Source: Trichosphaerium sp. ATCC 40318 (taxonomy: Eukaryota; Protista; Tubulinea). From it: a stretch of 64,000 bases of DNA. The first letter of the stretch is position 1. Every line of letters begins with the position of its first letter. The stretch is from positions 124,001-188,000 of the forward strand of contig JALMLS010000093.1 in the NCBI GenBank assembly GCA_038496445.1, in the 5' to 3' direction. Below the pieces are notes generated by a model, which did not search any database, had not been told where the DNA came from, and was given only the letters and a program-made list of their open reading frames with translations. Shown here piece after piece: positions 20,993 through 59,586 of this stretch. The position numbers and the translations under genes are program-made.

Positions 20993-23397
20993 ATGCTAGC
21001 GCAAGTGCGTGCTGTTGCCAAGGTATCAACACAGCCGCTATGCTGGGAGCTGGTAGAGAAGGCTGTAAGTGAGGTAGGCGTATAGTTTGCCCGTTAGTGT
21101 CCTCATTGTTAGGTTGAACGCAGCGTGCGTGTGCGAGAACTTGATGATTGGTACAAAGTTGACCACAAACGCTTAGCCAATTTTTCGTCGTTCCAAGACA
21201 TCCTCACGCGGTGCGTGGTTCGCAAATGGTAGTGTCACATCATTTGTAGGAATTTCAACAGTTCTGTACCAGAGTTGCTCACAACTGTATATTCTGATCA
21301 CCCGTGGTTGCCGTGGCGTGTGGGTACCGTTTTATTGCTCTACAAAAATTACAAGTGTCAAGTTTGTGCATAGGTAGAATGAAGCAGTCGTATTGGTCCA
21401 ACGACGCAAACTGCGTTTTGTTTATGCGTCATGTACCGACTATTTTTGTACACGGCACCTTACACGCAATCTAGGCGGAAGACGCTTTTGGTATAACTCT
21501 CTTGTCGGATTGGTACTCTTGCTCCACGCCTAGTGTAATAGGGCTTGGTGGCGGCTCGTTTCTAGGGTATGCCCTCAGCCTATCCTGTCCTGCAAAGAGT
21601 ATAAACAGTGGTTGCTGACAGCGCCAATAGGCGGTTCAATCACTCACTCTTACATGCTCTCCGCTATTTTTATCCTGACTACGACTGGCAACCAACGCGG
21701 TTTGGTATGTCAAGCCTGTTTAGTGGTTCACCTCAAACTTTGTTGTAAGGATCTGCACCACACAAGTTTTGGAACTCTTTAGATAATCAAAGGGCTTTAA
21801 TGAGACATGTGCGGCACATGACTGTCATATGATTGTCCAGTTCTTACACGGCGATAATAGGTTGAGAAACAGCTTGGTATCAGTCAGATACAGGACTGGT
21901 ACAAAGTGCGTGTACAGCAAATCAAGCAACATGGTGGCACTGGCGTCTTAAAGTACGCTATAGCTGCTTGTTGCATACAAGTATTCTTATGCTTAAACAG
22001 GTTGTACAATGATTCCAAGTTGCATCTTTTACAAGCCATGTACCCCGAGTTTCGATGGCTCTCATGGAACTTTGGTACTAACTTGTTTGCACGTTTTAAA
22101 GCAGAGCAGCTGCTTACTTGATACTTCAGACACGACACCACGCAATTCAATACACAAGCATAATTTTGATGACTACGTTTGCCATGTGCGGTATATGCCA
22201 ACGTGACTACATTACTTACGTATGTGGTAGCTAGAAAGCACATTAGGTATAGTTGATGTAGAAGATTGGTACAATATAACAACGGTTAAGCTCCTAGCCA
22301 CCACTAAGGGTCTCCGAAAGTAAGGACACCAATGTTAGTGATGGCACTGTATTTAATTACTTGTAGCTTATTTCCATCCATTTTGTCATTCTTGCAGTGG
22401 GCCTATCCTTTCTATGAATGGATACCCTGGCGCTTTGGCACGTGGCTTAAACGTCGTTATGAACCACAATCTTACATTGTTGTTAGCTATGGCCTCTACT
22501 ACCTTCTTTAACCTCAAGGAAAACCAACGGTACTTTATACGCAAGGTGCATTTTTGGCAATCTTATAAGGAACAGTGGGCACTAACAGAGCTAAAGGTGG
22601 AACAAGCGTTGGATATAAAGGATGTGTATGATTGGAAGACTGTAACAATGACACAAGTCATACAACATGGTGGATTTGGAGTGATGAAGCGGCATGGCTT
22701 GTCGCTGAAAACCATGCTTAGCAGCTTGTATCCTGACGTCGATTGGCGAGAAAATACTTCAGGTTAGTCTCATGTTTATCAGTTGGTCTCATGTTGTACA
22801 GGATCGTTGTTGCCAAAGTACTGGAGGCCCAGTATTTCGCATACCGCGTTTTTTAAGCTAGTAGCTACAAAGCTGAGTATACAGTCTCTTGACGATTGGT
22901 ATAGAGTATCACACAGAGAGCTAATACAGCATTGTGGTGTTGAGATACTACAGAAGTGGCCCGGAATAATAATGGAGACATATCCTGATCACAAGTGGGA
23001 ACAGAGGAAGTTTGTGCAGAGGGACAAGCGAGCCACACAAAGGTGGTTATATACAGCAGTGCGTCATACGTTTCCCGATCACGACATACTGGAGGAGTAT
23101 GAGATATCATTTGGAGACGGCGACCGCTCCGTTACCTTGGATATCTTTGTGCCAACGCTGAACCTTGGCTTGGAATATCAAGGTGCACACCACTATCATG
23201 ACATTAACGCTTTTGGACCATCAGCGATACAATCTATCCGCGATATCGACAAGACTTCACTGTGCCAAACTCAAGGCATCACGTTGGTGCATGTGCCTTA
23301 CTGGTGGACACACAAGCATGTAGACGCGCTCTGCGCGATGCTGAACCAACACAAGTACGCCACTGTCAACAATCCAAACCCGCTCACAAAAAGATAG
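20993..23397 (+). CDS. DWY-repeat protein A: six ~75-aa tandem modules plus a C-terminal Vsr/DUF559/RAP-like PD-(D/E)XK nuclease domain
   Basis: Spliced translation gives recurring units such as FWNSLDNQRALMRH/VEKQLGISQIQDWYKVRVQQIKQHGGTGVLK/LYNDSKLHLLQAMYPEFRWLSWNF. The C-terminus reads ILEEY...LDIFVPTLNLGLEYQGAHHY...RDIDKTSLCQTQGITLVHVPYWW. Confidence 0.85.
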
Positions 23398-23639
23398 ACC
23401 AGATGCTCAGGTAGCAGGCGACACGTCCACTCTGTCGTTGGTGCCTTCCTTAGATGATATCAAAGGTACCAAGCATAGCAGTTTTACATTTATACATAGT
23501 CTTGAGGTTTTGACTAATTAGTGTTTAATTATAGACCGCAAGCTTATGTTCTGCGATGCAGGTGTAAAATATGTACAATAGTAGTTGGCATCAGAATTGT
23601 AAAAATACGGTAAAAATTAACAACAGCTGATATCCTTTG

Positions 23640-24337
23640 TTATTGCAGGGCTGCTTGGGTGACTGTGTTGGTAGTGAGATCACGTGCCAGTCTTCCCTTT
23701 TTGTCCTTAATAGTAACCAGGGTTTTGTCGTGTTGCAGCAGCACTTGGCAAAGCTCTGTGTTGGACCTCATGGCCGCCTTGTGTAGAGCAGTTTGTCCAT
23801 CCGAGTCTGACACAAAATGGGTTAGTGGAAGTGCATGTGACATGTGACGAGGTACCTTGTATTGTCACGTCCGCTCCATTGTCTATGAGTAGTTGTACTG
23901 TCTTCATTCGCGCCGCTGTGGCAGCTCTGTGTAACGGTGTGGCGTTTGAGGAAGTTTTCGCGTTAACGTTGGCTCCTGCATCTAGTAACCATTTACATAC
24001 ATCCTCATCTCCTCTGCGGGCTGCGTAGTGTAGCTGAGAAGCTGAATGAGATTTTTGTCGTTCCCGTTAACGGAAATGAAGCGTACAGCAGTGTAACCGA
24101 ATTTATCGGTTATTTTGACATCCTTTCCCCTGTCCAGAAGCCTTCTAACCTTGGCCTTGTCTCCTGTGCTAGCAGCACCTCTACCACACTCATTATTGTT
24201 GTACAGCGGCTATTAGTTGTGTAATGTATTGCTTACGCGACAGTACGGAGGAAGTCCATCTCTGAAAGCGATTGTGTAGCAGTTGTACCAATATCGCATT
24301 CACACGTGCGCCCATCGCCGTGGGCGTGTCCTGCCAT
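23640..24337 (-). CDS. ANKRD39: Ankyrin repeat protein 39-like
   Basis: N-terminal His/Cys segment and TQSLSEMDF motif, then ankyrin repeats (GYTALHYAARRG, ATPLHRAA, DSDGQTALHKAA). Confidence 0.8.
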
Positions 24338-24459
24338 TTGGTAGAAGGCAGCTGGTCGCTTTGGTTCAAACAAATGTCAAAATCATTTAGCGCTACATGG
24401 AATGTACGCGTGCCCGTCTACATACATCATTGTGGGGCGGGGCACACGGTCTGTAAGTT

Positions 24460-25981
24460 ATGAACGATCGTATGCTACCGTTTGCTCCCCACGACATGGG
24501 CAAGGCTTGTTTATGCCTAATGGGTGCGATTTACCGTTAAAATGATCAATAACAATTAAATGTAGTTTTGTTAAAACAGAGGCGGCGTACAGAGCACAAA
24601 TGGACGTTGCTGCATGTCAATTGGCTGTGAAAACACATAGCGACTGGTACAGTGTTGGCACATGCGACATTGAGCATTTGGGCGGAAAGGCGTTCCTCGC
24701 AATGTACTTTGGGCTTTCGGTTTCGGATTTAGCTTTTTGGTTGACACACTACATTCAGGTTTGGAGGCTCACTGGCAAAGGCTTTACAACACGCATACCC
24801 GTCGGTAGAGTGGGAATTGCGGCGATTCAAGTGCGTCAACTGGATGCAATCTTGTTCTTATTCATCACGCAGGAACTCTCCACAACGTTTTTGGCATTCA
24901 CTGGAGCACCAGCGCCAGGCGTTTGATAGCTTTGGTCAGGCCTTAAATGTGAAAGTGTTAGACGACTGGTATGACGTCACTGGCATGGCACTGCGACGAC
25001 ATGGTGCTGCCGGATTACTCACATCACAGTCACGCATTCATCCAATTGTTACTACGTTTTTTGCGTTGACAAGTTGAGTAGATACAACAGTTCCTTGTAC
25101 CGTGCCGTACAAGCACTCTACCCGCTAAAAAAATGGAAGCCGAGTGAGTTCGTGTACGTCCATCCGGCGTTGTCTGGCAACTTTGCAATCACTCCTTTTG
25201 TGTTAGAGATGTCGTGTGCTAACAGGATATTGCATTCAGGTGTTTGCCGAATGGTCATTGGGCTTCATTAGCTAACCAACGCCAATTGTTCAACAAGATT
25301 GCACAAAAATTATCACTCAAGACAGAAGCGGATTGGTTGGGTATAACAGATCGTGTGTTGTGCGCACACGGAGCAGCAGGGCTCTTAAAAGCCAAGTACG
25401 TCCCGTTCGTTCTTTATTTTAAGAGCGATTGAATGCTACATACACAGCACGTTTTTATTTTGGTAACTGCATAGGTACAATTACAGCATGTCATTGGCGC
25501 TCAATAGTATATACCCTCAAGGCGATTGGCGTGCATTTAGAACAAAGTAAAAAGAGTGAGTTTGGTTGTTGCATAATTCTCATATTTTTCTGTTAGGCGT
25601 GTCAAGAACTACTGGCGAGATTTGCCCAACTTGACAGGATTTGTTTCAAAAGTGGAATCTGCACTTTGTATGAAATCTCCGTTGGAATGGTGCGGTTACT
25701 GTTGATGCTTGTTTATAACAGGTGTCTTGCTTACAGGTATTGGGTGTCCAAGCCACAGTTGGCTGCTCTAGATGGTGGCGGCTTGCTCAATTACTTTCCA
25801 GGCTTTTTGACGGCTGTACATCCTCACATAGATTGGGATATGCGCCGAATGAGACAAGGCGACAAGCGTACAATGCAAAGGTAATTAATTGTTCTTCCTC
25901 GCTTTCTTTGTTGCCCGTATTCAAGATTTTGATTGTAGGAAGCTAACAACGAGAATCCACGCACTCATACCCGTTTCGTGA
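24460..25981 (+). CDS. DWY-repeat protein B: four ~75-aa modules, nuclease domain absent
   Basis: Units such as FWHSLEHQRQAFDSFGQALNVKVLDDWYDVTGMALRRHGAAGLL and HWASLANQRQLFNKIAQKLSLKTEADWLG. The protein ends GDKRTMQRKLTTRIHALIPVS-stop (TGA 25979-25981). The start codon is uncertain. Confidence 0.75.
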
Positions 25982-26103
25982 TAAGGTGATTGGTGTGCAG
26001 ACGCTTACTTGTAGTGTAAAAATAGGATTGAATTTGTTATTGTTTATTGTGTGCAAGTGCAACTGACAAAACAAATAAAGGCACGTGTATTTGTAAAGGG
26101 AAT

Positions 26104-27410
26104 TTAGTTGCATCCCTTCCATATGAATAAGTCTGGGACCCGCTGCTTACCGTCAAACCCTCCAAAAATGGCAGCGCCTTCTTTAACTGGGCAAGCTGCA
26201 ATCCATCCTCTAGAAAATAATTATTTTCATGCGGTCGCAATGCACGTGGTTTTGTACCTTGGTTTTGGGGTCGTGCTGTCCTGTGGTACTTTGCTCCAAG
26301 TTCTGGTAGCGGTGTCCAGTACAAATCCATCATTTGTAAACTGACCCGAACCCATATGACCTACAACATACTTGTATTATGCATCTCGTTAAGTTTATTT
26401 AATTCGGTTGAATGTAGTACCTTGGTCTTTTGGAGCAGGCTTAACCTCACCGCCCCATACAAATACGTTTCCGTTTTGTAAGAGACAACTGCCAAACTAC
26501 GCACAAGTACTGTATTAGTATCCTACCATTGATTTCTGGCTTACCACGCTCCTGGGACAAGGGGCTGTCCCTTTGCTGTCCATTTTGGACCACACGCTTG
26601 TCTTGATATCGAGAGCGTACACGTCGCCAAGCTCCTCACCATTGAAGCCGAATAATACGAAAACGGTGCTGTCAGTGGCTACAATGCTGGCGCCCCCTCT
26701 TTGACCAGGGGATGGACCGGTTGCTTCGATGCATGTCCATGACTATGGCAAGTGGTAAGCACCAATTAAAGATAGTTATCTGAGTTGGGCAGGCGTGGTG
26801 ACCTTAAAAAGAAATACCTTGGTTTGCGTGTCAAATTGCCACAGATCGTCCCATCTACCACCACCTTGTTTGCAGCCGCCGAATACGAAGATTCTGGTTC
26901 CATTGGAGGTCATTGCTTGATAGGATCTTGGCTACACGTGCATGTCAATGCAAGCGACATGAATATGTGGGCGTACAGGTGGTGGATTTTGGCAGTCTAT
27001 TGCGTTCCAAGTGTTGTTTGCAGTGTCGAACACAAAAAAGTCATTAAGCTCTTTCGCAGGTACAGCAGTTCTACCTCCAAATACGTAGCTTGTGACGTGT
27101 TAGCACTCTGTTTTTGGATATAAATGCGTACATCGACTTTTCGACAACGGCAGCGCTGTGAGCAACGCGTAGAGATGGTGCTTGTCCTATTTACCGACCA
27201 ATTTAGAAAAAACCGTAAATTTGCCCGTGCACCTTTAGTTTCGGCGGTGCTCCAAGTTTTGGTGTTCATATCGTAGGCGTGAACTTGACTGCCTATCGGG
27301 ACACGTGGTACATTCTCGCCTCCAAATACGTACAGGACGCCATCGACGCAGCTAACAGAGTGAGAACTTCGCCCAACAGGGCCTTTTGGTGCTGTTGCTT
27401 GACTCCACAT
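26104..27410 (-). CDS. Kelch-repeat protein (nitrile-specifier-protein-like beta-propeller)
   Basis: GPVGRSSHSVSCVDGVLYVFGGENVPRVP, PRSYQAM...FVFGGC, PGQRGGA, YVWGGEV, PRGWIAA...IFGGFDG; stop TAA at 26104-26106. Confidence 0.85.
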
Positions 27411-27508
27411 TTTGTTGCTAACACGTAGCGGAACTATTTTGACATATGAGCTTATTTTATTTTAATTAGCCCAATAGCTGGCTTGTATTTTTTTTACAAA
27501 AAGATGTT

Positions 27509-30500
27509 CTAAATCGCAACGACAGACGACGGCAACAAAGTAAATCTGTACACCCCTGTATTTGACCGCTTCAAACGTGATGTACGTTCTGATGCTCTGG
27601 TTTTTTGCAATTAGCTTTGGAACGCATTGATGGAATTAAATGTTGGTACCTTTTAGAAGTGACTATGAGCTCCCACAAATCGTCTACCATAACTCGATTT
27701 ATGTTAAAATAACCATGGAACTGTGAGTTCATGTTTCTGTCCAGATCTGACGTGTCAACGACATCCATGTCAATCTTTCCGCCGAGGAACCCTGATTTGA
27801 TGGATGCAACTAACAGTCGTGTAAGTGTTAATTAAATAAAATTAAACCGGCTTGTGCTATGTGTTTAATATGTCCACGTGTGGTTATTTATATCAACAAC
27901 AAACCAGAACTAGACGTACTGCCAAAGTTCTTTTGCCTGGTGAGAGTGCCTGATGCTTTTACAGCAATGTCTCGCGAGTCAGCGTATAAAGTGATATTTT
28001 GTGTGTACTTGAAGGTATATTAGTTCTGGTGCAAACAAAGAGGGCGCGGTGTACCGGTTTGACGTCATCGTAGTCGTGTACAAATGTTGAAAATTCGTAT
28101 TCCGGGTTGAGGAAGATGAGGTTTCTGAGTTCTATCCTTCTGTCGTTGACTGGCTCTGTGTTGATGCTAAGGCGACTGTTTAATTAATGTCAAAATCCAG
28201 TAACGCTTGTAAGGAGAGCGTTTGTTTTGCAAATACCCGCTTGGTTGTGCACGAGGGAATTGATGCTCTTCTTCAGACTCATCGGATAGCATAGAACCTA
28301 GGAACGCACCGGGCTGTCGTGAGAATATTGACTTTGTCGTTGCAAATGATCGGAGGAAGAACCGAGCGCCCAAACTAACATGCGCGAAAGCGCGGTTAAA
28401 AAACTAGATGGTGTAGAATGCTGCGGACCTGTGGCACATTATGTGCAAGATCTTAATACCAGCGACCTCCAAGCACTTGAGGAATCGCTTAAAATCTCTA
28501 TGTGTATCATTGTCTAGGCGCGAATCAGATGTTAATTCTCTCTGGTTGCAAAAAAAAAAGGCAAGAAAGTGAGGTTGGGTAGCGTACCAGATGCTTGGTT
28601 GTGTGCGCACCAATATAGCAATGGACTTGTAGCGCTTGGCCAGTTGAATACAAATGGGCGAATGTGCTTTGGAAAGTTGCCTAGCGCCAAGAACTGACCA
28701 AATCGCTTCAATGCGTCATTCAAATCATGGTACAATCTAACGCGTGGTTAGACATGTGTGTGGGTTGGTAATGTGTTAAGAATTGTTGCTGGGTTTACCC
28801 GTGTATGAACAGTATACCCTCAGAGCCACCAGTAGGTATCCATTCCTTATCCAAAACCATCTTGTGTCCTAAATTTACCTCGTATAAGCACAACAGGAAG
28901 GGTTTATAGGAGCTTGAAGCGCTTACCACCAGGTTCCCGGTTTTCCAAAGAGATTGTGACCGAGTTAACGTCCTTGGAGGATGGCTGGAATCCAGTGACC
29001 TGTATTTGGTGATCCTTTTGGTTGATGGACAAGCCCAACGATGTCTACGCTCAATGGCAAGGTGTTAACTTTCAAAAAACAATACAAATAAAAAAATAAA
29101 GCCAAACAAGACGCACCAGCTCTTTTTCATCGTCAATGTGCAGCCACGCTTTTTTTTCAAGTAATTCTTTGATTGCGTTGCGACCTAGATACTATTTAGG
29201 TGGCGCGTATGTTATCCACACTGTGGCGTCATAGGCCAACACGTGCTGACAAGTGTGAGTGCTGACAGCCGTACCTGCCCTTCCTCTCTTCACTTCTGTT
29301 GGCCCTGTGATGAACTTTACAATAGGATACCCCTTTTGGTACACAGCGTCAGTTGTTTGTTACAGGTCGTACATAACAAAGTGTCCCAAGTAGTAAGTAC
29401 CTTAAAAAAATTGCCAGAAACACATGTTTCTGAGCATGCTACGCCAACTTTGAGTGCTGTCTTTTCGATCCACCACCGCCCTCCAGCGTTAGTCGCGAAT
29501 ACAATTCTAATACAGAATGTCAGTGAGTCTGGGCGGTGATTTGTATAGTGCGTGGAGTCTAACCTTAGGTTGACGAGCATGTTCTTGGTATCACTCTCCA
29601 TGGATTCAAACGGACCCAGAGGCGTGCCGTTCTCCCAATACCCCTTCAAATATTCGCCTTGAAACGATGTATCGATCCAAGTGCCTCTGCCATGAGGTTT
29701 GCCATCTTTGACTTGCCCGGCGTATATGCACTTCTGCCTAGAGTCGCCAAAGAACGATCGCACTTCGATTTCGTAGTGATCACGTGTACCATTTTCAGTG
29801 TCCACCACTGAATGTGTCGGCATGATAGCGCCAGTGCAGGTATAGAATGCCCTTTTAAAACAAAGATTGAGTTGGTCTTTAAATGGATTCGGGATAATGG
29901 AGGGTTGTGATCCCACCCCAGTCCTATTGGTTAACATACCGTATGACCATTGGATAAATCACAAAGAGTATGCTTACGAGCAAGAACATCCCCACTCCGC
30001 CAAGGAGGAGCGGTACATAAGCCTAAATATATGTTACCCATTGTTAATACATGGTTTCTTATGGTTCTTGTTTATGGGTCGTTGGGTGTGCGTACCCTGG
30101 CATCGTAGTACATGGAGAATATAAAAAAGATAAATAAACAACCATAAGTTATAAAGAACAAAACGCGCAGCAGCCACCCCACCATTGGAGAAAGTACTCC
30201 TGTTGCTATAGATACAAATGCCATGAGTATAAACTCTAGTGGTGGTAAGCAAAGCACAGCAAAAAACAAAAAGATGACCAACTGTCACATAGAGATAAAT
30301 AACATCATATAGTCATTTTTTTTGTATGAGCCTATTGCAGTTCTTATTCGTCCAAAAACGCACCCAGGATGTAGTTATCGACGCGTTTGAAGAGCGCGAT
30401 TTGTAAGCCGAGGTATACTGCAAACAAGAGGGCATAGAGGATGACGTATTCTATAGACCAACTTCTGGGTCTGCCATAAGATGCTCTTAGAAGTCTGTTC

Positions 30501-31064
30501 CACTGCCGACGTTTCATAATCCAGAACGTCCTAAACTGCGTCAGGATATTGATGCAATCAAAGTAAACAACGTACTGCTCCAGTTCAGCGTACAACGGCT
30601 TCTTCGGCTTCGACAGCAATGACGTCCTCTCTGAGCGTGATCGTCCAGAAGCGGCCGAGCGACGCTTTACCGACGGTATTCTTAAGGAAAAGCGCTTTTT
30701 GCTGTTCGCTTTTCTGTTGCGTATTTCTTCTTCGTCAGAATCGCTTGTTGAGGATGTATTTATCACTTTAACGGGTCAGGTGAGGGTTACTACGCTGTTT
30801 GAAGTGAAGGGTGATGGTACCCAAATATTTGAAAAAAGGGTGCTGAACAGCTTTTACAAAAAAATTAATATGAAAAGTCGTACTACCACTCTCCTTGTCT
30901 CCGTTCTTATTACGCTTGCGTGTACCAATAACGCCTGAAACTGTTTTTCTTGAAGGTGTAAACGTTGTTTCATTGCGTGTGTTGCTTTTAGGCGTGGTTT
31001 GGTCGATAGGAACAATTATTGGGTTCTCAACGCTATCATCTCCTGGTTTTTCATTGGTACTCAT
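27509..31064 (-). CDS. Multi-pass membrane protein with MORN-like segment and C-terminal alpha/beta-hydrolase (DUF900-like) domain
   Basis: TM-rich exons at 29950-30460; YAGQVKDGKPHGRGTW...LKGYWENGTPLGP; ILFIHG...FVFNWPS and nucleophile elbow HIMCHSLGAR. Confidence 0.7.
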
Positions 31065-31385
31065 TGTTTTATCAACTTCACACTGCCATTTGGCGCTATA
31101 GGTTGAGGGACAGACTAATATTGAGCTTTGGTAATGCAGCTTATCGCGTTGACATTTTGGTGACTTAACCACACCCCGCTTTGTCGCATTCAACCAACAA
31201 GATAGAGCTACAAATATAGGTGTAGTGAATTCCTTGTCAAGTTGGGTGGCACGTGCTAAGGTCCTCGATGCCATTGGGTTTAACTACGTGTTAATATAGG
31301 GTTGTGAACGTAAAATACATCCAAGTAGAGTACAGTCTATGTTATTGTACAGTTAATTGCAATTGTTAATCAATAAGTCCCAGCA

Positions 31386-34300: not shown

Positions 34301-34587
34301 ATAATTATCAATGCGTAAATATGGTGAGTGAATGCCGTACAAGCGAGTTTGTTGTAGCAAGATCAAACTTAATTCGCCCATACTCTATTATGGCCTCCAC
34401 AGAGGAAGCCAGGGCACTTTTTTTACATGATAAGCGATATTTGCGTCGTGAGCGGTCTTTAATTGCTAAGCGTATATTAGATACAATGGTATGATATCAT
34501 ACTAATACCAAGGCCATATGGTTTCGTTTTTAGAGGTTCTTCTTTGCAATTTAGCAATATGATGGTCCTATCCACCTGGTTGTCCAT
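31386..34587 (-). CDS. INTS13: Integrator complex subunit 13 (Asunder) homolog
   Basis: KSALASSVEAIIEYGRIKFDL, LAVSHFNLRSLRITGIPIKD...YNVVLL, SHVL...DIYIHAL and C-terminal NLFYEYWSR...KHVDPEGR match recalled Asunder blocks in order. Confidence 0.72.
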
Positions 34588-44860: not shown

Positions 44861-44929
44861 ACATTTATTGGCATGTTTTTCTTACTTTACATTTTTTATT
44901 TACAAAATGCCAAATTAACTTTTTACAAC

Positions 44930-47900: not shown

Positions 47901-49490
47901 TGTCAATGGTTTGTACTGTTCTATCATGTGACACGCACATCAAGAATGCTCTGTTCTACTGTCCAAAATTTGAGTGCACCTTCAGCACGTGACCATGACA
48001 ACAGTTGATACTCCGTGGTGCCAGTTAATTGTGAGACACGCCAGCCAATGTTTGAAATGTGGTCTGTGTGGCCATCAAACGTTGCTACCAGCTTGGGTTC
48101 GCTTGGTTTTGCTAGAGAATACACGGCTATTGAATGTTCGTCAGCCATCGTGCCAACCACACCACCACCAAAAGGCTAGTAATTTCAACAAAATGTAAGT
48201 ACAATGGATACATTTAATCAAAAAAAAAACGTGGACAAATTTTCTTACCGTGAAGCATGCAGTACTCATTGGGAATGGTGCTTGTAGTCGGGCAAGCTCC
48301 GATCGTGGCTTAGTAATATCCCAAAACTGTATTCTGTATGTTAGGACCAAAAAAACAAAGGGTAGTACACGTGCCATTATTCTGTTGCTGCACGTCATAA
48401 TCTCATTTGGATTTTTGTAGTGCCAATCAATGTTCGTTATTTGCTTAGTTTCCGCTGCTATACACAAGAAAGGAGATGCATGTTTCTACTTGACGTGAAT
48501 TTGGCGTAACAAGTAAACTGAAAGCAGAAAAAAAAAACCACGTGTCTCGTACCCTCACATCCCAAAACCTCACTTGTCTACCATGGGCACTCGCTAATAT
48601 ACTATCTTTCTGTCTATTCCACCTCAACGATGTAGCATGCTCTACGATGATGAATTGAGCACGTGAAAATGGAAAAAAAAAAAAAGAATAATTACCATTG
48701 TGGGACTGTAACGACCTCATGGTAAACGCTTTTTTAGGCTTCCTCGTGTCCCACATGTGTATAAATTTGTCGCTGCCAGCACTTGCTAAAATGTGAGGAC
48801 GTGATTTGGCTTGCCAATCAATGTCCGTCACTGCACGCCTACACCTTGCGTTATAATTCCTCTGTTTGGATTGGATGTACAATAAAACAGGCAAAGGAGA
48901 ACGTCGCATGAATCACTGCTGTCGGGGGTTTTTTTGATTGTTTTTTTTTTTTTTTCAGAAAATGAGTTCGTCTGCTACTTACGTGTGGCCGTCCAATACA
49001 GATTGCAGTGCCCCTTGCTCACTATCGAGACTCCATATTGCAATGCTGTCATTGTGCTGTATGGTACATTAGATGGTCGACGATGTGGGAACAAGTCGCA
49101 AACTGAACGGAAAAAAAAAAAAATCATGAAATGCGCGTAACAACTGATTTTACATGAGTTTTTACGTACTGTGGAAGCAATAAGGGAGTTGTGCTTATTC
49201 CATTTTATAACACCGACTGGATGTTTTGCACTTCTGTACTTTAAAATGCGTAGAACTCGTGAAGGGTCTTCCAGGTCCACCAAATACAACCCTCGCACGC
49301 TATAAATGCCATTTAATGAAAAGTATCACGGTTTATCAACGCCGTACCCGCCCAGCGCCGCGTATTTACCAATGGTATCTATACCGAAAGTATCAACCTT
49401 CCTGCGCCCAAACGTATCGATGCATAGATTTTGATAAATAGTCGATACATCCTCCTGGTGCTGCGGTTTTGTGCCGAAACGCGGTTCCAT
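44930..49490 (-). CDS. WDR59/Sea3-like WD40 + RWD region fused to OXR1/NCOA7-like LysM - GRAM-like - TLDc domains
   Basis: WD40: RGLYLVDLEDP, AVTDIDW...HILAS...IHMWDTRKP, ILASAHG, FTPFG, FDGHTD. RWD: VFFPHAYPLAPPAF. LysM: HIVAPGETLSSI...QLIPGQV. TLDc: LPLRYRYLGWKRVFATYEDGTSL...VFGGF...YFGTGQSFLF. A phase-compatible intron at 47200-47277 links RWD to LysM. Confidence 0.75.
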
Positions 49491-49780
49491 CTCAAAAATT
49501 TAACGCGTTTGTCGTCTGTTAAACATAAACCTTTTTCTCAGCACCTCTCTTGTCTACGTAATACGTTGAGCTAGTTATTGGCGTGGGAGACTTGCTGGTA
49601 CCGACTTAATCCGCACCCATTTGGTATTCTATTTGTTACCTTTTGCTGTAGACAATACATTGTATACTTGAAGGGTTTTCAGCAGGTCGACCGTTAGTAG
49701 AAAACAAAAACGTGTAACGAGACCGGACTTAAATGTGACGCCGTTGTTCCTTTACCTAAATAACGAGCAACAGAAACGCA

Positions 49781-50369
49781 ATGGTGAGTATTTGTGTGTA
49801 CTTTTCTACAGTTAACCGCTGTACCAGGGCTGCTCTTTTCACTTTCTCCCAACGTCTCAATTAAAGGATGGTATAGTAGCCAATTACTTCAAAGTGCGCT
49901 TACGAGCATAGGAATATTTGTTTTACAAAGGTGGTTCTGGAAATGGCTGATAGACTTCCCAAAAAACTCCTCAGCTGTAGAGCCTTCGCTCTTTTATGTA
50001 TTAATGCTCGTAGGCTTCCCTTTTGTTTTGGTACGTTATTGGCAATACTCCACCCTTTATTCTGCCAGTTTAACGCTCAGTAGTGCTTCTATTTATTGCT
50101 TGTTGTATTGGACATAGTACATTTGGTTGTATTTGTTGCTGGTTTGGTACTATGGGGTATAGTGTGGTTCGTTACATCATTTGGCACTTGTTTGTGCTGC
50201 GTACGTTTACCTGCACAATGAATTTGAGTCATATTGATAAATGCCTAGTTCCACATAAAGAATTGGTCCGAGTGGGCACATATTCTTATGTCGCCGCCAT
50301 GGTATGTCGCTCAATTAGTGAGTTGCTCGTGCTGCTGCAATCCAACAGGCTATGAGGGCAAAATTATAA
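49781..50369 (+). CDS. Small multi-pass membrane protein of unknown function
   Basis: ATG-only first exon and a 28-nt intron, then hydrophobic exons (LFYVLMLVGFPFVL; FYLLLVVLDIVHLVVFVAGLVLWGIVWFV); stop TAA at 50367-50369. Confidence 0.55.
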
Positions 50370-50519
50370 GCGTTGTTGAGCGCGTGTAAGAAACAACAAG
50401 AGGTTATTAGCAACACATTAAATCATTCTTTTTTTTTATTACAGTCACGTTTTCTTTAGTACATTATTCATTAATATTTATCATCATCATCCATCATCAG
50501 AAAAAAAAAAATTGTTAGT

Positions 50520-52065
50520 TTACAGCGCAAATAGAGACGTCACATCTTCGTCACTGTCCAGTAGTTGGTACATTGACAACGGTGTCTCGTTCATTTGCAA
50601 ATAGGAGTCATCATACGCATCAGAGATATAGTCCAGCAGTATTTCATTGCAGTGCAAGGTCCCTTGTGTAACAGCAGAGTCTTCACTCACTGGTTCTGCA
50701 GTTGGTTCTGTCGGTTCGACACTCTGAATGGGCGACGTTGCAAGTGGAAGTATGGCTGGGGTCGCAGAAACTGCTTCAGCGACATCGCATGCCTGCGTTT
50801 CTTCAATGGGCGCTAGTGCTTCGAGATCGTCTGCCCCTGAGGTATCAGAATACAACGCAGCGCTAACACAACGTGTCAGTTTCGTAGTTAAAACATGGCG
50901 AGAGAGCCGCTTGCCTCAAATTTGTTTCGCTGCAGCCAAATGGTTGGGTGTCGGGCAAGTCATTACTAAATTCTGGCAGCGGCAGCATGGAGCTAACATA
51001 AGACGTGGGCCTGAATGAGGGAGTGAGTGGAGTTGATTTAATCTGGTTGTTAGAAGAATGACGTGCCTTAGTCCACAAAAGCCAAGAGTGTAGGATGTGG
51101 CGTTCGCAGGCCTCTTTGTGATGACAGGCACTTCGTTAATGCCAAAAAATGTGCCTTGTAGCGGTGAGATTACGACGTGTGGTGCGATCATTGTGCGTAC
51201 GGCTAGATGTAGGAATTGACGATGCGTACTGCACGCTCGCTTGTTCTTCTCGTTTTTTCCTACGCTGCAAGCTAGCCCATCTGTTTTTTACCATGCCTGG
51301 TGGCCTGCAGAAAAAGTGAGTTGAAAAAGGTGGTTACTGGGTTTTTGAATATTCAAATTCAGGACCGCCTCAAGCGCCAAAAACGCAAATTCCAATAAAT
51401 GGAAACGAAAAAAACATTTGTGTAGTACCGCCCAGGTAAATGTTTGCTTATATCCGCCCATTTGTTCCCCGATTCTTGTTGTTGTTTTACTATTATTTTG
51501 TCCTCTTCAGGACTCCACTCATCGCGATTTATAGTTGGATCCAAGTGATTGAGCCATCTAAAAAACTATTTGAGCGTGTTAAGAACGCATTGGGTTGTAC
51601 CGTTCGCGACATTGTTTTCCAGAACGCCCAGCTACTCTTAGCGATATCCTGGACCACTCACGAGCCCCTAAACTGGCAACTGTTTTCGAGAGAATGTCAT
51701 CTTCCTGTCAAATAGGTAAATACACATCGTGTATATTGCGTACAGCTTTTGTCCAACGGCCTGTAATTGATCGTTTACGTTTTTTAGATAATCTGACTGG
51801 AGGAACGCCAACATCGTCTGTAAGCTTTGAACGGGCCTCAAATTCAAGCTATTTAATGATCAATGGGTGCACGACTGCTAGAGCATACAAATTGAAAGCT
51901 GTACTGCTTCCAACCTGCGTTTGAAACTACAACGAAAAATAATGCAGTGGCTTGTACCTTTGGCGAATTGGCGTTACGTAGTTTTTGTTTTGTTGTTTGA
52001 TCGGTTCTGTCGCTTCCTCTGTTTGATATGTCACCTAATGCTCGACGTTCAAAATTGTGGTTCAT
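50520..52065 (-). CDS. R2R3-type Myb transcription factor
   Basis: GRWTK(A)EDDIL...WSRI...GRSGKQCRERWLNHLDPTINRDEWSPEEDKII...GNKWADISKHLPGR...VKNRW. Confidence 0.9.
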
Positions 52066-52296
52066 TCGGCTGTTGTAATGTGTAGGTGTACTAGCCGTTA
52101 AAACCGGTTTGTTTTACTTTCAAAATTCAAAAAGTTTAAGCCAACCCCTTCTTAACCATTTTTACAAAAAACCGTTCGTGGGCACTGTCACAACATTACA
52201 TTGCGAGAGGTTCCGAGGCTACGGAGTATAAGCGCAATTCGCAAATTTGCGGTGTAAAATCGTGTTAATTTGGATTGAAGTGGTCTAAACGACATC

Positions 52297-55200
52297 ATGT
52301 CGGTCCGTTAAGATTGCTGAGAGGCTTATTGGAATTTATAATCATAATATTTCATAGAAAGAAGCACTGGTGGCGTTATTGGACGTGGGCTTGTCAATTA
52401 CACGCGGGAAAAAAGATTCAAAAAACCTAGAAAAGGCTATACACGTTATCAAGCTTCTCGTGCAGGGAAAAGTACGTCCAATGTTTTCCAGTCAACTATT
52501 GACCAACGTGACAGTTGTGGAAAAAAGCCAAGGATGAGATAGGGTTTGTACTCTTTGGTACAAATGGTACGCGCTTCTAGAATTAAGCTGTGCAACCAAC
52601 TAAAACAAAACAGAAACATTTAATGATCTGTGCGATGATGGATACAAACATGTTTTTGTAAAGCGTGACATCTCGCCACCAGACCTCGATCTCATACGAG
52701 AAATAAACAATGTGGTGCCTGGAGACAAGGGCGGCGACTGTACGTCCACTGCTTTTGTTCTTTAGCTTACACCCTGCTCACTTGTTCAGTCATTGATGCG
52801 CTCATCGTTGGCATGGATCTTCTCATGAAAAAGACGCAAAACACTAGAACGTACCAAAAGCGAATGTTCCTTGTTACGGACGCTGGTTCTCCAGTCAACA
52901 AAGAAGGCCTTGAAACAGTATTACAGCAATGCAATCGCATTCAATGTAGTTTGAACGTCATGTACTTTGTTTTCTCGGTCTCTTGAGTCAATGCTACCCT
53001 ACAGCTAACCATACTTGTTTCTTCAATAGAGGTGTCGATTTTGCGGATGAAGATGGCAATCATGCGAACCCTGTGTCAGACATTAAAAGAAAGAACGAGA
53101 AGCTATTGAACGCCATGTGCGAACAGGTGAACGGCGTTGTCCTCACCACCGATCAAGTATGCTCTTACTCACCAATCCCTCTGCCTCGCTTTTGTAAGTC
53201 TGTTGCTAGGCACTCTCAATGATGTCATTCATTCAACCAAAACAAGTTGCGCAGCGAACAGGCTTCAGGTAGGACTTGTAGATTTTACGTTCTGGAAAAA
53301 GATAACCCCACACACATTCCATTGTCAACGCTGAATTCCTTTGTAGAGGCATGCTAGAAGTGAGTCCCATTATACGGATACCATTGTGGAGCTATTCAAA
53401 GACGTATCCTGCAAAATTCCCATCAATGACCAAAGTCTCTAAACTTGCCCAGCAACGTACGTGGATCGTCACATCACATGCGGTTTTTTTTTTTATTTGT
53501 GAGCGCTAAACGACTGCCAGTGGACGAACCTGGACGTTGTGAGGTGGACCTACAACGGACATACCACAGTCTTCAAGATCCCGATGAAGAAGTACCACGT
53601 GATGAATGTATCAAGGCATATCGTTATGGCAAATCTCTGGTACCATTTTCAAAAGATGACGAATCTCTATTGGCGTACAAGTGCGATCCATGCTTGCAGG
53701 TACATCGCCATCACGCAAAATATGAAGAGACTCACCAATGTCGTGTTTTTGTCAGGTGATAGGATTTTGTGGCAAGGACGAGGTGCCCAGACATCACTTT
53801 ATGGATACTATAGAACTCATGGTGCCGCTACCTGAAGATGACAGCGCTGCGATAGTACCCAGCATAAACTCCATATTTGCAGTTTAATTGACTGTGTTGT
53901 AGGCAATGTCGGCTTTTGCGCACGCTCTCGCCGAAACGGATTCAGTCGCTATTGTCCGTTACGTAAAGAGAAAAGGATCTTCGCCTAAATTGGGTGCTTT
54001 ATTTCCACATATCAAGGCAGACTACGAGGTACGTCATGCGCTAATCATGAATCAGTGGCTTTTTTTTATTTCCAAACACGTGATTGGCAAATAGGGCTTT
54101 TATTTCGCGCATCTGCCGTTCGCAGAGGATTTGAGATCGTATCCATTCAAGAGTCTTGGTCAGGATGCTATACGCAAGGCTGATCGACCCACGCCCGACC
54201 AACTACAAGTTGCAGAGGACTTGATCAACGCTATGGACCTTACAACGGCTGCTATAGACGAGGATGGGTAATGCCCAGTTGACTTACATAGCCCTTACGC
54301 AATCACAATTATTAATTTTAGTAACTAGGGACGAAACTGAAGCGCTCAAACCCAAGTCCTGTTACAATCCACTTATACAATACTTTTTTCAATGCGTGCA
54401 AACACGGTCCTTGAACCCAACAGCAGCAATCCCCAAGATGAAAGAGTATATTAGACATTGTGTCGATGCCGATCCCGCCTTTGTTGCTAAAGCGAATGAC
54501 CAAATTGACGCCTTCTCGACATCGTTCGATCTCATTAAAACAGGTCCCAATCCTTTAATGTGTTGGAATGCGTTGAATTAAATGTTTATTTTGTTTAGAC
54601 CTGGCGAACAGGCAGGATGCCAACAAGAGAAAATTCTGGGTAAGCTATCACATTATCTGTGTTGCTAATTTCCACTAACTGGCTTTGTGTTAGTCAAGTG
54701 TCTTTGATGGTCCAAATGATTTGAATCTTGACAGTTATTTACCAGATCAAAAGAAACAGAAGTTAGACACAGCCGCTACAACTTTTCAAGTACACCTCAC
54801 CTCTATCATGTCTTTTTTTTTTATTATTCAAATTGGTGTGCTAACACGGGTTTGCGCTACAGGCGTTGTTGACAAAACAAGTATCCAAAGTTGGGTCAAC
54901 AAATCCTACTCAAGACTTCTTGGCTATGATAAAGCGTAGAGATGAGGATCTTGTTGCGGATGGTACACGCCTATATTGTGATGAATCTGTGTTTTGTAAT
55001 AATATGTTTCTTTTTGTTAGCTATTACCCAAATGCAAAGTTGCATCACCAAACTCGTCCTTGAGTCTGTACGCGATACATTCTACCCCAAAGCTCTGGAT
55101 TGTGTTACTGCACTACGATTGGGTTGTATACAAGTACGCTTCAATGAGCACGTGTCTATGTTATTACCGTTTGCCTTTAGGAAGATGAGACTGAGAAATT

Positions 55201-55528
55201 TAATGCATTCATGCACAATTTACGTAAATTATTCAAAGGCAAGAAACGAGATGACTTTTGGCAGCTCCTCAAAACCAAAAAAATATCGTTGATCACTTCC
55301 GCTGAAAATGAGGACAGCGATGTTTCATTAAATCAAGCCCAGCAGGTACTTAGGCTTTCATATAATGTAAAGAAAGGCATGATTAATAATGTGTTGTAGT
55401 TCTTGCTCTCGGCTGCTGCAGACGATGGTGATGTCATAGATCAACCAATGCCTGACATCATGGAAGACGAAGACATAGACTTAGAAGCTGAAGAGAGTGC
55501 CGACAAATTATTTGATCTATTGGAGTGA
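52297..55528 (+). CDS. XRCC5: Ku80 (XRCC5), non-homologous end-joining DNA end-binding subunit
   Basis: vWA: EALVALLDVG, DEIGFVLFGT, DALIVGMDLL, TDAGSP. Core: KAYRYGKSLVPFS, AIVRYV...PKLGALFP, LPFAEDLRSYPF. C-terminal domain: VGSTNPTQDF, YPKALDCVTALR, ISLIT..E..DSDVS. Confidence 0.95.
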
Positions 55529-55652
55529 GGATAGAACAAACAAGTGTAAAGAATTAATTAATTGAAAAAATAAATAACAATAGATAAAAATAACTTTATC
55601 CCTAACTTGACTGCATTTTCTTTCGTCAACTACCATCCTACTTGCTAACTCA

Positions 55653-56971
55653 CTAGCTTTCTCGTTGGTTTTGTTGTTGTGCTAAGTGCAAATCCAGTCT
55701 TTCTACAAAGGAATGCAATTTGGTCATTTCTCCCTTGCTAAGCTTGGAGCGTGTTGTTTCTGGGTGAATTGGGAGAAAAGGCAAATCTGGGGCTAGCTTG
55801 GATGCCAGTGTTTGCAAGCAGCTGAAAGTTATGTGAGACATGTATGCGTGGCTACCATAAAGTTCCTTGAACAGCATGTAACCATCTTTTTCTGAGCCTG
55901 GAGTCTGGGCATAGTGCTCTATGAGCATATTGTACGTGTGCAAGCTGGGCTTTATACCATGCTGCTGTTGCTGTTGAAAGATGGAAAGAGCTGTCGCAAC
56001 ATTTCCCTCTTTTAGATAGTTCCGGATGAGCACGTGATACGTGATGTTATTTGGTATACAATTGACATTTACCATTTCTTCAATGAGGTTGAGCCCTTCG
56101 TCCGCTGGTATGTTTGTAATGTAGGCGGTGTAGGTCACTGTGCTAATTGGACTGCTTTTGCATTGCTTAGCTAGTTTGAAGGTTTCATGCATGGCATCGT
56201 AATCTTTAGTTCTGGCGAACATGTTTATGAGTGTTACGAAAGTAACTTGATCTGCTTCCAACTGTAATTCTTTCATTTCTCGAAAGCACTCTCCGGCGTC
56301 TTTGAGTCTGTCGTGTACGAGGCACACTTTCATGAGTGTATTGTATGTTGACGTTGTTGGCACGTAACCATCATCTCTCATCTCTTGCAGTGTTTTTTGT
56401 GCTGATTCTGGCGTAGGAGCTGTCCTCATAACAGCGTTATACACCATGGTATCCATTGGCATTTTCTCTTTTTTTAGGCTTGCAAATTCCTGCTCGACAT
56501 ACGCGTGATCTCGTACTTTTGGTGCCATAAACGAGAAGGAGCGCACAACTCTGTGCGGGTCTATTGATTGATAATCATTTTTGATAGCTCGGTACTTGGC
56601 TTTTAACTTTTCTTTTATTTGGTGTCAAAGTGGTGTCATCAATAAAGTCTAAAACCGTTTTATGGGGTTAGGCGTACCAGATTCACCGCCAGACTTGAGT
56701 CCTCTGTCTCGTTTTGGTGGCGTGTTTTGTTGGGTTCTATCTGACGTGTTAACGCCCAATTCCATGCGTATAAGTGCCATTGTACGTACTGCCAAAAGTC
56801 TTTATCACCAAATCTGCTTACCAGCTTGAAAACGTCGCTAGAACAGGTACGCATTCGCGTTGTAGGTGTAACGGTCCCCTTTAAAACACTCAATGACGTT
56901 TTTGTCTCAGTATTACGTACAACTCTATTATTTACGCGTAACGCATAAACCATTGGCACCCTGTTGAACAT
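55653..56971 (-). CDS. Pentatricopeptide-repeat (PPR) protein, probably mitochondrial
   Basis: 35-aa repeats (PTTSTYNTLMKVC...MKELQLEADQVTFVTLINMF..., PNNITYHVLI..., PSLHTYNMLI) and an Arg-rich, acid-poor N-terminus (MFNRVPMVYALRVNNRVVRN). Confidence 0.9.
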
Positions 56972-57107
56972 TGCGAGTTTTGTAAAATTTTGCCACTTAA
57001 TCTATTTTAACTCACGCTTAGGTCACTGTAAATGATGCAAAGTGACACAAGTGATGCAATTGGGGGGTTTGGGCGGTAGCACACGGATTTAGGCTCATAT
57101 CAACAAA

Positions 57108-59586
57108 ATGAAAAAAATTAACCCTGTAATATACGGGCCATGGCGCTCTACTCTTCACCAACGCAAAACCCTCGATAAAATTGCAAGTGCGAGAGGTATT
57201 AAAGTATTGAGTGACTGGTACAAGATACCTCGCGGGTCCATACCAGGAGCTGGGTTGGTGTTGATTCAGTGCGCGATAGTTTGACACTCTCACTGTAGTT
57301 ATAACTAGTAACTCTGTATTACAGGTACACATCAATGGAAGACGCCTTACGCGCACTGTATCCGAAATACAATTGGCACAGCTGGCGGTACGTTAACGTT
57401 CTTGGTTTTCAAATTTTGAGAAACATCGCAAAGAAGCACAAGTCTGTTTTTTGACCTGTCTGGTGTTCCAGGTGGGCACGCAAAACAAAAAATGTTCGCA
57501 GTGACGACTTGAGATACCGCAGAGAAGTTTTCGAGACCGTGGCGGAACGGCTAGGCGTCAAAGATCTAGATGGGTGGCTGACCGTCCCTAAACAGGCTCT
57601 GTATGAGAATGGAGCGCGATTCATTGTGGATGGGTTAGTATGCTATCCGTGGATCAGTCACGTTGACATTTGTGTGATTTTCGCTAATGTAATACATGCA
57701 GCTACAACAGAAGCAAACTGCGAACGTTGGAAGCATTGTATCCTCAGCGGAGATGGTACCTGCTACTCGAAGCGCCAAGGCACAAACCACTATTTGACCG
57801 AGTCGCTGAGCGCCTGGGCATTAAGGACTTTACTGGCTGGTTTGATGTCAGTCACAAGCAAGTGTACCAAGCTGGCGCAGCAGGGATTCTCAACAAGTTT
57901 AAGGAAACTCTAGAAGAAGTACTACGGGCAGTCTTTCCAGAGGCAAGCATGTTCGCAGCACGGTACCCGCTATAGTTACAAATGACGTGGTAGCTTACCG
58001 CCTGTAAAAGATGGAAACTACGAGCAGCAGTGCTGGATGGTAGCACAGCATTGGAAACTCTGAACAGTGCTGCTGCTGTGGTTGGTATTAAGACCATGGA
58101 TGATTGGTATGGCTTTACATGGTCCAAGTTGAGTGATTGTGAAGGCATCTCATACATCAAGAGGCATGTCTCGTTTTGTATTTGGTAAACAACAACTTTC
58201 TTTTCTGAGTTCTTGTTTCTTGCAGGCACAATAAAATGCCACTGGCCTTTCTAGTGGAAAGTGTGTATCCAGATTACAAATGGGATCACTCTAAGTTTAA
58301 GTACGTCCCCACTCGGGGGTTGCACCAACTCCATATACTTTTTACGGTGGATTAAAGGGCTTTTCAAGGTTTGTGCCTAGACAAGTAGTCACAGAAAGAG
58401 ATGTTGAGTTTAATAAGCTGAATGTGATCGCTCAAAGACTGCGCATCAAGCATCTTGATCAATGGTATCACTTTACGAAGCGATCGTGGCATTGGGCAGA
58501 TCATGGGATACTGACAGTGTTTAAAGGTTCTTACGCAGAAACGCTCATGCGTGCTTTTCCAGAACACGACTGGAAGCCTTGGAAGTTTGTGTACGTTTAG
58601 AAACAAACTAAAATGTTTTTTATGTCACGTGATTGACGTGTGTAGTACGCTACCGGTCGGATTCTGGAGTTCGAAAGAGAACCAATTGGCTTTTCTTCAG
58701 TCTGCACAGAAACAACTCGGTTTTAACAACACAAACGCATGGTACGTTGCTGTATGTTATTGTGTATTTATCTTAGTTGGGTCGAAGGTATCGCGTTTCA
58801 ACAGATCAACTTTTGAACTTGGGCGGACAAGTACAAGATCCATAATACAATTTTTTAATCTCTATCATAACACGCAAACTGCCTAGGGCATCATGCGGCA
58901 CTATCCACAAGCGCTACAACTTCTTGATAACAACTTTGCGTGGGATTGGTACAAGTTTCCATTGCTTACCAAACGAGCCAAGCAGCGTGTTCTTCTTCAA
59001 AAAACTAGACAGCTACTGCCAAACTACATCATTGAAGAAGAGCACTTCCTTGGCATTCGGCAATCCACGGGTATGGTTTTGTCTATTGATGTATTTGTCG
59101 CGGAATTGTCAATTGGGATAGAATATCAAGGTACCCCTCCCCTTTAAGGCTCACAATGCCATTCAGTATGAAACTCTTTAATAACAAACTAACAACTAAT
59201 TGAAGGAGAACATCACTTTAATGATGTGTACAAACACGCCATGCCTCTAGGCATTTATGAAGCACGTGACGCTTTAAAGCTGCAACAGTGCAGAGACAAC
59301 GGTTAGTTCATCTTTGTTTATGCTATCGCTCTTGTCGTTGTTTAGGTCCACTAATACTAAACGCGTAGGCATCACCCTTGTTCCAATTCCGTACTGGTGG
59401 GATACGACAATTGAAGCGCTTGCTGCAACAATCAAGTACCACAGACCTGATGTACAATTCCCGAAAGGCATCGATTCACTTGTACCACCACTACTATTGC
59501 AACACGCATCTGTGCCACAACAACATAATGTCCCTGGATTGATGTCACCTGGGGATGCTCATAAACGTAGTGGGCTTGTAAAATAA
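57108..59586 (+). CDS. DWY-repeat protein C: six ~75-aa modules plus a C-terminal Vsr/DUF559/RAP-like PD-(D/E)XK nuclease domain
   Basis: Units include IASARGIKVLSDWYK, VAERLGVKDLDGWL, VGIKTMDDWYG, LRIKHLDQWYH and FWSSKENQLAFL. C-terminus: KRAKQRVL...IEEEH...SIDVFVAELSIGIEYQGEHHF...RDALKLQQCRDNGITLVPIPYWWD. Confidence 0.85.

What the first reader, a model, noticed from the sequence alone, without database searches (positions are those of the whole stretch)
20993..59586. Family of modular ~75-aa 'DWY' repeat proteins fused to a PD-(D/E)XK nuclease: candidate natural repeat-guided nucleases
Seen: three dispersed paralogs (20993-23397, 24460-25981, 57108-59586) are built from 4-6 tandem modules. 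The consensus is about P..FW....NQ..F...vae.LGI..l.DWY.V....l...GG.g.L..y..S....L...YP...W..w.F. Two of them end in a domain with E..D-h-h-x6-h-x-h-EYQGxHH...RD..K...C...GITLV.hPYWW. Known: that motif is typical of Vsr/DUF559/RAP-type restriction-endonuclease-fold domains, and repeat-plus-RAP layouts (FASTK, OPR-RAP) are sequence-specific organellar RNA factors. This module is not PPR (35 aa), OPR (38 aa), TALE (34 aa) or ankyrin. Inference: the scaffold positions are fixed while the residues after DWY and around GG..L vary between modules, as expected if each module reads nucleic-acid sequence and targets the nuclease. That would be a TALEN/PPR-like system with an uncharacterised recognition code. 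The YP..W..W.F..P..FW part is reminiscent of bacterial DUF4046 repeats (from memory, unverified). Similar hypothetical proteins may exist in other amoebae.
Basis: partly seen in the sequence, partly recalled or inferred. Interest (0 to 1): 0.88.

Follow-up and report, generated by a model that had tools for sequence, protein, structure and literature searches.

The report
Repeat-array nucleases of amoebae
Three expressed, intron-rich genes encode arrays of a 75-residue helical module, two of them ending in an intact Vsr/RAP-type nuclease. They belong to a very large, unnamed and unstudied protist family that probably aims a nuclease at mitochondrial DNA or RNA.

Summary
Three + strand genes carry 6, 4 and 6 tandem modules with a period of 73-79 aa. 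Genes 1 and 3 end in a PD-(D/E)XK domain.

RNA contigs confirm two introns of gene 1 and all introns of gene 2, and they correct gene 2. Its ATG is at 24402, not 24460. It stops 14 residues into the nuclease domain, so it is a true array-only paralog.

The family is huge: 4,387 representatives at 50% identity, with 1-24 modules per sampled protein. Named sources are amoebae (Cavostelium, Vannella, Nolandella, a heterolobosean).

A three-module model of a homolog is very confident (pLDDT 95, pTM 0.80) and has no solved counterpart.

The only other domain found in 216 members is a Lig E-type DNA ligase placed directly after the nuclease. N-termini are often presequence-like.

Verdict: an array-guided organellar endonuclease family, a new variant of the repeat-plus-RAP/Vsr theme. 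DNA (slightly favoured) versus RNA is unresolved, and a recognition code is untested. The scan flagged this family at least eight more times elsewhere in this genome.

The parts
20993..23397 (+). Gene 1: 15 exons, 582 aa (576 aa if intron 12 is GC-AG 22438-22486); six modules plus nuclease
   Evidence: Splice model. Introns 21953-22000 and 22075-22129 are seen in RNA contigs.
21011..23001 (+). Gene 1 module array (6 modules, residues 7-451)
   Evidence: Module profile matches
23017..23391 (+). Gene 1 Vsr/DUF559/RAP-type nuclease domain; D498, E509, H515, D532, K535
   Evidence: Nuclease profile E 6e-42. Model pLDDT 87.8. Fold matches. Residue numbers.
24379..25983 (+). Gene 2: mRNA 5' end at 24379, CDS 24402-25983, 10 exons, 355 aa; four modules, no nuclease (ends 14 aa into the first helix of the nuclease domain)
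   Evidence: All nine introns and the adaptor-tagged 5' end are seen in RNA contigs. ORF. No nuclease remnant anywhere downstream.
24501..25839 (+). Gene 2 module array (4 modules, residues 34-328)
57108..59586 (+). Gene 3: 12 exons, 604 aa; six modules plus nuclease
   Evidence: Splice model, with no RNA check. The junction at 58173/58185-58225 is uncertain.
57108..58946 (+). Gene 3 module array (6 modules, residues 1-439)
58965..59475 (+). Gene 3 nuclease domain, split by introns 59131-59205 and 59302-59368; D487, E498, H504, D522, K525
   Evidence: Nuclease profile E 1.9e-34

Best explanation
Genes 1 and 3 encode array-guided endonucleases. A rigid, basic array of 75-aa five-helix modules (homologous to bacterial DUF4046) binds a stretch of nucleic acid. 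It holds a catalytically intact Vsr/DUF559-type PD-(D/E)XK domain next to that stretch, and the domain nicks or cuts there. The proteins are most likely imported into mitochondria. I lean towards DNA as the substrate: site-directed nicking or cleavage of mitochondrial DNA for repair, recombination or copy control, with the ligase-bearing relatives resealing the cut. Gene 2 is an expressed array-only paralog that would bind without cutting. Shown: the gene structures and gene 2 expression; the modular array and its confident fold in a homolog; homology to DUF4046; the nuclease fold; and near-universal retention of the catalytic residues. Inferred: nucleic-acid binding by the array, sequence selectivity, mitochondrial location and the choice of DNA.
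Confidence: 0.45

Rival explanations
1. They are organellar RNA-processing or RNA-stabilising factors, working like OPR-RAP, HPR-RAP and FASTK proteins. The array binds a specific single-stranded RNA segment of a mitochondrial transcript and the RAP-like domain cleaves nearby. Array-only paralogs such as gene 2 would protect RNA ends.
Against: The Pfam RAP model hits none of 89 members. A profile of the family finds no RAP protein among solved chains. The module is a five-helix domain, not a helical hairpin. A Lig E-type DNA ligase fused behind the nuclease in seven relatives is hard to fit to RNA work. The nearest sequence relatives of the nuclease are in phage and bacterial DNA enzymes.
Confidence: 0.35
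2. They are not organellar. They are nuclear or cytosolic sequence-directed DNA nucleases that serve in defence against invading DNA (giant viruses, transposons), or that behave as domesticated or selfish homing-type endonucleases.
For: The best structural match is a homing endonuclease catalytic domain. Phage relatives join the same nuclease to repeated DNA-binding modules and sit among phage structural genes. The family is expanded in amoebae, which host many viruses. Many database models start directly with a module and have no leader.
Against: The genes have 9-14 spliceosomal introns at conserved module positions and are ordinary chromosomal genes. Where an N-terminal extension exists, it is mostly presequence-like. 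No match to the module was found in viral structure or phage collections. Many leaderless models are probably truncated gene calls.
Confidence: 0.1
3. The array does not read sequence. It is a protein-protein scaffold or a non-specific nucleic-acid clamp, and the nuclease acts without site preference, for example in bulk turnover or repair.
For: No column of the module shows the small, restricted residue set typical of PPR or TALE code positions; variability is spread across the module. Bacterial DUF4046 proteins are arrays without a nuclease and give no functional clue from context. The module has no solved relative with a known ligand.
Against: Module number varies from 1 to 24 and paralogs diverge to 20-30% identity, which fits diversified targets. 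The proteins are strongly basic. The array is fused directly to the nuclease in a fixed order.
Confidence: 0.07

Closest known systems
OPR-RAP, HPR-RAP and FASTK proteins (organellar helical-repeat proteins with a C-terminal RAP domain)
   Different: The repeat unit is a 75-aa five-helix domain, not a 37-38-aa hairpin. The Pfam RAP model does not match (0 of 89). The catalytic residues are almost invariant. DNA ligase fusions occur. The named sources are lineages where RAP proteins were reported undetectable.
Bacterial DUF4046 proteins (Pfam PF13255; for example the Priestia megaterium plasmid protein WP_146274406.1)
   Same: The module is homologous and also tandem (three copies in register). 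hhalign gives 97.4%, E 9e-12 for the family profile and 89.9%, E 1.7e-6 for the window's own 16 modules. ESM Atlas TM is 0.59.
   Different: There is no nuclease domain. The DWY and GG motifs are absent. They occur in Bacillota, the function is unknown, and no open paper mentions the family.
Vsr, DUF559, DUF2726 and the EDxHD homing endonuclease I-Bth0305I
   Different: Those are prokaryotic or phage DNA enzymes with other targeting domains (zinc ribbons; NUMOD-type modules, from memory). The Pfam DUF2726 gathering score is not reached.
TALE nucleases and PPR proteins
   Same: Only the concept: tandem modules that could aim an effector domain.
   Different: There is no sequence or fold relation. 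No one-module-one-base code has been shown here.

Membership tests
PD-(D/E)XK superfamily, Vsr-like branch | Alpha-beta-beta-beta-alpha-beta core fold | tested here: met
PD-(D/E)XK superfamily, Vsr-like branch | Conserved acidic, histidine and lysine catalytic residues | tested here: met
   D-E-H-D-K is kept in 150 of 155 members and in genes 1 and 3. The catalytic role is inferred from position, not assayed.
RAP domain (Pfam PF08373, PROSITE RAP profile) | Match to the family's sequence model | tested here: not met
   The Pfam RAP model hits 0 of 89 members at E<=1 and no window piece. The family profile finds no RAP chain in the PDB. UniProt nonetheless labels two close relatives as RAP domain-containing.
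RAP domain (Pfam PF08373, PROSITE RAP profile) | RAP-type fold at the C-terminus of a helical repeat protein | tested here: met
DUF2726 (PF10881) | Score at or above the Pfam gathering threshold (24.7 bits) | tested here: not met
   37 of 89 members match weakly, best E 1.2e-5. P0005 scores 23.6 bits. The window protein has no hit.
DUF4046 (PF13255) | Match to the Pfam model | tested here: not met
   No hit for window pieces. Only 5 of 65 homolog arrays hit, at E>=0.004. Precomputed hits are marked 'faint'.
DUF4046 (PF13255) | Profile-level and fold-level homology to a bona fide member | tested here: met
   The Priestia protein scores 47.6 bits on PF13255. It aligns to the family profile at 97.4%, E 9e-12 over 203 columns, and to the window's own modules at 89.9%. 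Atlas TM 0.59/0.53.
PPR, OPR, TPR, TALE and ankyrin repeats | 30-40-aa repeat unit matching those models or folds | tested here: not met
   The period is 74-77 aa. There are no such Pfam hits and no solenoid of these kinds among fold matches with meaningful scores.
Organelle-targeted nuclear-encoded factors | Cleavable N-terminal presequence and organellar location | tested here: inconclusive
   A composition test gives 59% presequence-like against 12% background. The gene 2 N-terminus fits. No predictor or localisation data were available.
Sequence-reading modular arrays (TALE/PPR-like code) | A few hypervariable positions with a restricted residue set that track target bases | tested here: inconclusive
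   Entropy over 757 modules shows many variable, mostly polar or basic positions. These include 41, 44 and 48, which would lie on one face of the helix after DWY. No clear code positions stand out, and no targets are known.

The most novel reading that the evidence does not exclude
The DUF4046-type module is a new natural unit of modular nucleic-acid recognition. Each 75-aa module would read a fixed, short run of bases, so that arrays of 1-24 modules aim an active Vsr-type nuclease at chosen sites in mitochondrial DNA or RNA. In some relatives a fused DNA ligase would be aimed too, giving a recognise-cut-rejoin enzyme. That would be a natural counterpart of TALENs with an undeciphered code.
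Probability: 0.2. Interest if true: 0.9.

Novelty: new variant of a known kind. Interest (0 to 1): 0.68.

Why it matters
If the array is sequence-selective, this would be a fourth kind of modular nucleic-acid reader after zinc fingers, TALE and PPR/PUF. It already comes coupled in nature to a conserved, apparently active nuclease, and sometimes to a ligase.

It would also name the missing repeat-plus-nuclease factors of amoebozoan and heterolobosean mitochondria, where a published survey could not detect RAP proteins.

It would give a first functional lead for the bacterial domain DUF4046. Even without a code, a family of more than 4,000 sequence clusters with a confident new fold and no literature is worth characterising.

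Tried and rejected
- Pfam on six window pieces gave nothing.
- A PDB sequence search with the window protein and with the family profile gave only chance hits.
- The word-index homolog search with the 197-aa piece found nothing, because of its length filter.
- My first gene 2 model (ATG 24460, acceptor 24579, stop after MQR) was rejected by RNA joints.
- A nuclease remnant downstream of gene 2 was looked for and not found.
- tblastn of the array against phages gave no match.
- Literature searches for DUF4046 and PF13255 returned zero papers. DUF2726 papers and RAP/amoeba searches gave nothing specific.
- The ARAGORN tRNA-His inside gene 2 is not supported by Rfam.
- Window proteins could not be folded whole, because spliced sequences have no reference. 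A homolog array was folded instead.
Full report
**Observation**

The window is eukaryotic DNA with short spliceosomal introns. No single open reading frame covers any of the three loci.

I built splice models by listing all GT-AG introns that join neighbouring motif-bearing frames. I chose among them by donor type and by register with the module.

- Gene 1 (20993-23397) has 15 exons and encodes 582 aa.
- Gene 3 (57108-59586) has 12 exons and encodes 604 aa.
- Gene 2 has 10 exons and encodes 355 aa.

The tryptophan of the DWY motif recurs every 74-79 aa in gene 1, every 75-76 aa in gene 2 and every 65-83 aa in gene 3. That gives 6, 4 and 6 modules. A profile built from these 16 modules, run over all six reading frames of the 64-kb window, gives significant matches only in these three genes. 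This is far more than chance.

**RNA evidence**

Assembled contigs of four public runs were laid on 20900-26000. They show spliced forms that match two of my gene 1 introns (21953-22000 and 22075-22129). They cover every gene 2 intron.

They also correct gene 2. One contig carries a template-switch adaptor at 24379, which marks the mRNA 5' end. The first intron is 24524-24565, which shifts the frame, so the ORF starts at ATG 24402 rather than 24460. A further intron, 25881-25938, removes the apparent stop, so the CDS ends at 25983.

The protein then stops 14 residues into the first helix of the nuclease domain. A nuclease profile finds no remnant anywhere else in the window. Gene 2 is therefore an expressed, array-only paralog, as another first-stage note proposed.

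Gene 3 and the 5' half of gene 1 have no RNA check. One gene 1 intron may be a GC-AG intron (22438-22486) rather than the 31-nt GT-AG one in my model. One gene 3 junction (58173 or 58185 to 58225) is open.

**Family size and range**

The last exon of gene 1 (one module plus the nuclease) was searched against 1.84 billion representative proteins. It finds 4,387 proteins at E<=1e-3 and 1,754 at E<=1e-10. The best are only 27-43% identical.

All 153 proteins fetched at that stage carry modules, between 1 and 24 each with a median of 6, and the period peaks at 74-77 aa. Named sources are Cavostelium apophysatum, Vannella, Nolandella, a heterolobosean (BB2) and an MMETSP transcriptome. The rest are unnamed eukaryotic contigs. 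ESM Atlas clusters list Discosea, Tubulinea and Evosea, plus one weak structural match (TM 0.37) to a Mucoromycota cluster.

The first-stage scan flagged the same family at eight or more other places in this genome, including ligase-bearing forms. I treat those notes as leads only.

**The module**

The consensus over 757 modules runs as follows:
- a Pro-x-x-[YF]-Trp start;
- Asn-Gln-Arg-x-Phe;
- a Leu-[GN]-Ile-Lys turn;
- Asp-Trp-Tyr-x-Val;
- Gly-Gly-x-x-Leu-Leu-x-x-Tyr;
- Ser-Leu-x-x-[AL]-Leu;
- Tyr-Pro-x-x-x-Trp.

A three-module stretch of the best homolog (P0001) folds with pLDDT 95.4 and pTM 0.80. Each module forms four to five short helices, and the high pTM implies fixed packing between modules.

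The ESM Atlas does give a match: bacterial DUF4046 proteins of Bacillota, with TM 0.59/0.53 over 178 residues. I fetched one such protein from a Priestia megaterium plasmid. It is a bona fide PF13255 member at 47.6 bits. It aligns to the eukaryotic three-module profile at 97.4% probability, E 9e-12, over 203 columns, module for module. The window's own 16 modules align to it at 89.9%, E 1.7e-6.

The Pfam model itself does not reach the window proteins. No open paper mentions DUF4046.

**The nuclease**

|---|---|
| I-Bth0305I homing endonuclease catalytic domain | 9.6 |
| RAP part of human FASTKD4 | 9.3 |
| NGO0050 | 9.3 |
| Vsr | 8.8-9.0 |
| T. gondii mitoribosomal proteins | 8.2-8.5 |

AlphaFold DB's nearest clusters are protist fragments labelled RAP domain-containing (E 1e-16), followed by bacterial DUF559 proteins. 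Swiss-Prot gives YcjD-type DUF559 proteins, Vsr-type nicking enzymes and plant RAP proteins.

By sequence, 37 of 89 members give sub-threshold DUF2726 hits and none hits Pfam RAP. Five residues (Asp, Glu, His, Asp, Lys) are kept together in 150 of 155 members with a complete domain. They are all present in gene 1 (D498, E509, H515, D532, K535) and in gene 3. Such retention argues for an active enzyme.

**Clues to substrate and place**

- The proteins are basic: pI 9.0-9.7 in the window, family median 9.1, modules about +2 each.
- Among 56 homologs with at least 20 residues ahead of the first module, 33 start with a stretch holding at most one acidic and at least three basic residues. Only 12% of internal windows do. 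The RNA-supported start of gene 2 is of this kind. This fits mitochondrial presequences but is a crude test.
- Every long stretch outside modules and nuclease, in seven proteins of the 216-sequence sample (213 family members, after leaving out the three window proteins), is a Lig E-type ATP-dependent DNA ligase. NCBIfam PRK09125 scores down to E 2e-46, and there are PDB matches to Lig E enzymes. In six proteins the order is array, nuclease, ligase.
- In viral contigs the nuclease has relatives of 27-41% identity. The ones I read are phage proteins with their own repeated zinc-ribbon modules, next to structural genes, which is the usual look of free-standing homing endonucleases.

These points tilt me towards DNA. 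Against that, the repeat-plus-RAP layout, the RAP-level fold match and the large paralog number are what organellar RNA factors look like. I put DNA at about 0.45 and RNA at about 0.35.

**The code idea**

Column entropies over 757 modules show a conserved hydrophobic and aromatic scaffold and many variable, mostly polar or basic positions. Positions 41, 44 and 48 should lie on one face of the helix after DWY. They favour Ser/Thr, Gln/Asp/Lys and Asn/His, which is compatible with a recognition helix. No position shows the tight residue set seen at PPR or TALE code sites, and no targets are known. The code remains a hypothesis.

**Gene structure**

Introns recur at the same module positions:
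- in gene 1, near positions 5, 25 and 55;
- in genes 2 and 3, near positions 5 and 55.

This indicates growth by duplication of exon sets. The last module of genes 2 and 3 shares an intron inside the Trp codon of DWY. That fits descent of gene 2 from a nuclease-bearing ancestor.

**Comparison and novelty**

The layout works like OPR-RAP, HPR-RAP and FASTK proteins, or like modular homing endonucleases. It is not a member of the RAP family by the Pfam model, and it is not a PPR, OPR, TALE or ankyrin array. The repeat unit is a new one for eukaryotic nucleic-acid factors, related only to an uncharacterised bacterial domain.

A published survey reported RAP proteins as undetectable in Amoebozoa and Excavata (PMC8190603), and I found no paper on this family. 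I class it as a new variant of a known kind, with interest 0.68.

Noticed in passing
window 23529-24237, - strand: Between genes 1 and 2 an RNA contig shows three introns with CT..AC ends (23807-23855, 24034-24086, 24189-24236). That indicates an expressed gene on the opposite strand. Its product was not examined.
   Followed up: no
window 24397-24456: The gene 2 leader holds a short upstream ORF (ATG 24397, 19 codons). It overlaps the main ATG at 24402 in another frame.
   Followed up: no
window 25546-25597: Two donor sites are used for the same gene 2 intron in different runs: 25547 (50 nt) and 25556 (41 nt). The longer exon adds 9 nt in frame.
   Followed up: partly
window 25325-25421: ARAGORN calls a 97-nt tRNA-His inside gene 2, across an exon-intron border. 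Rfam finds no tRNA there, so it is probably a false call.
   Followed up: yes
window 22438-22486: A GC-AG intron with donor GCACGT would place gene 1's twelfth intron at the usual module position and phase. The GT-AG alternative is only 31 nt, shorter than any intron seen in RNA here.
   Followed up: partly
window 55653-56546, - strand: A 297-aa ORF just upstream of gene 3 looks like a pentatricopeptide-type repeat protein by eye. It may be another organellar factor.
   Followed up: no
P0016, P0066, P0073, P0045, P0168, P0169, P0106 (homologs from other organisms): A Lig E-type ATP-dependent DNA ligase is fused directly behind the nuclease. First-stage notes report the same layout elsewhere in this genome.
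   Followed up: partly
L046 5221-6534 and L022 5806-6507 (viral contigs): Phage proteins join a related nuclease domain to tandem ~57-aa zinc-ribbon modules, beside tail genes. This is an independent case of repeat modules plus this nuclease.
   Followed up: partly
L083 4337-6483 (Priestia megaterium plasmid): The bacterial DUF4046 gene lies next to, and diverges from, an Rpn-family recombination-promoting nuclease gene, with spore germination genes downstream. This may be chance.
   Followed up: no
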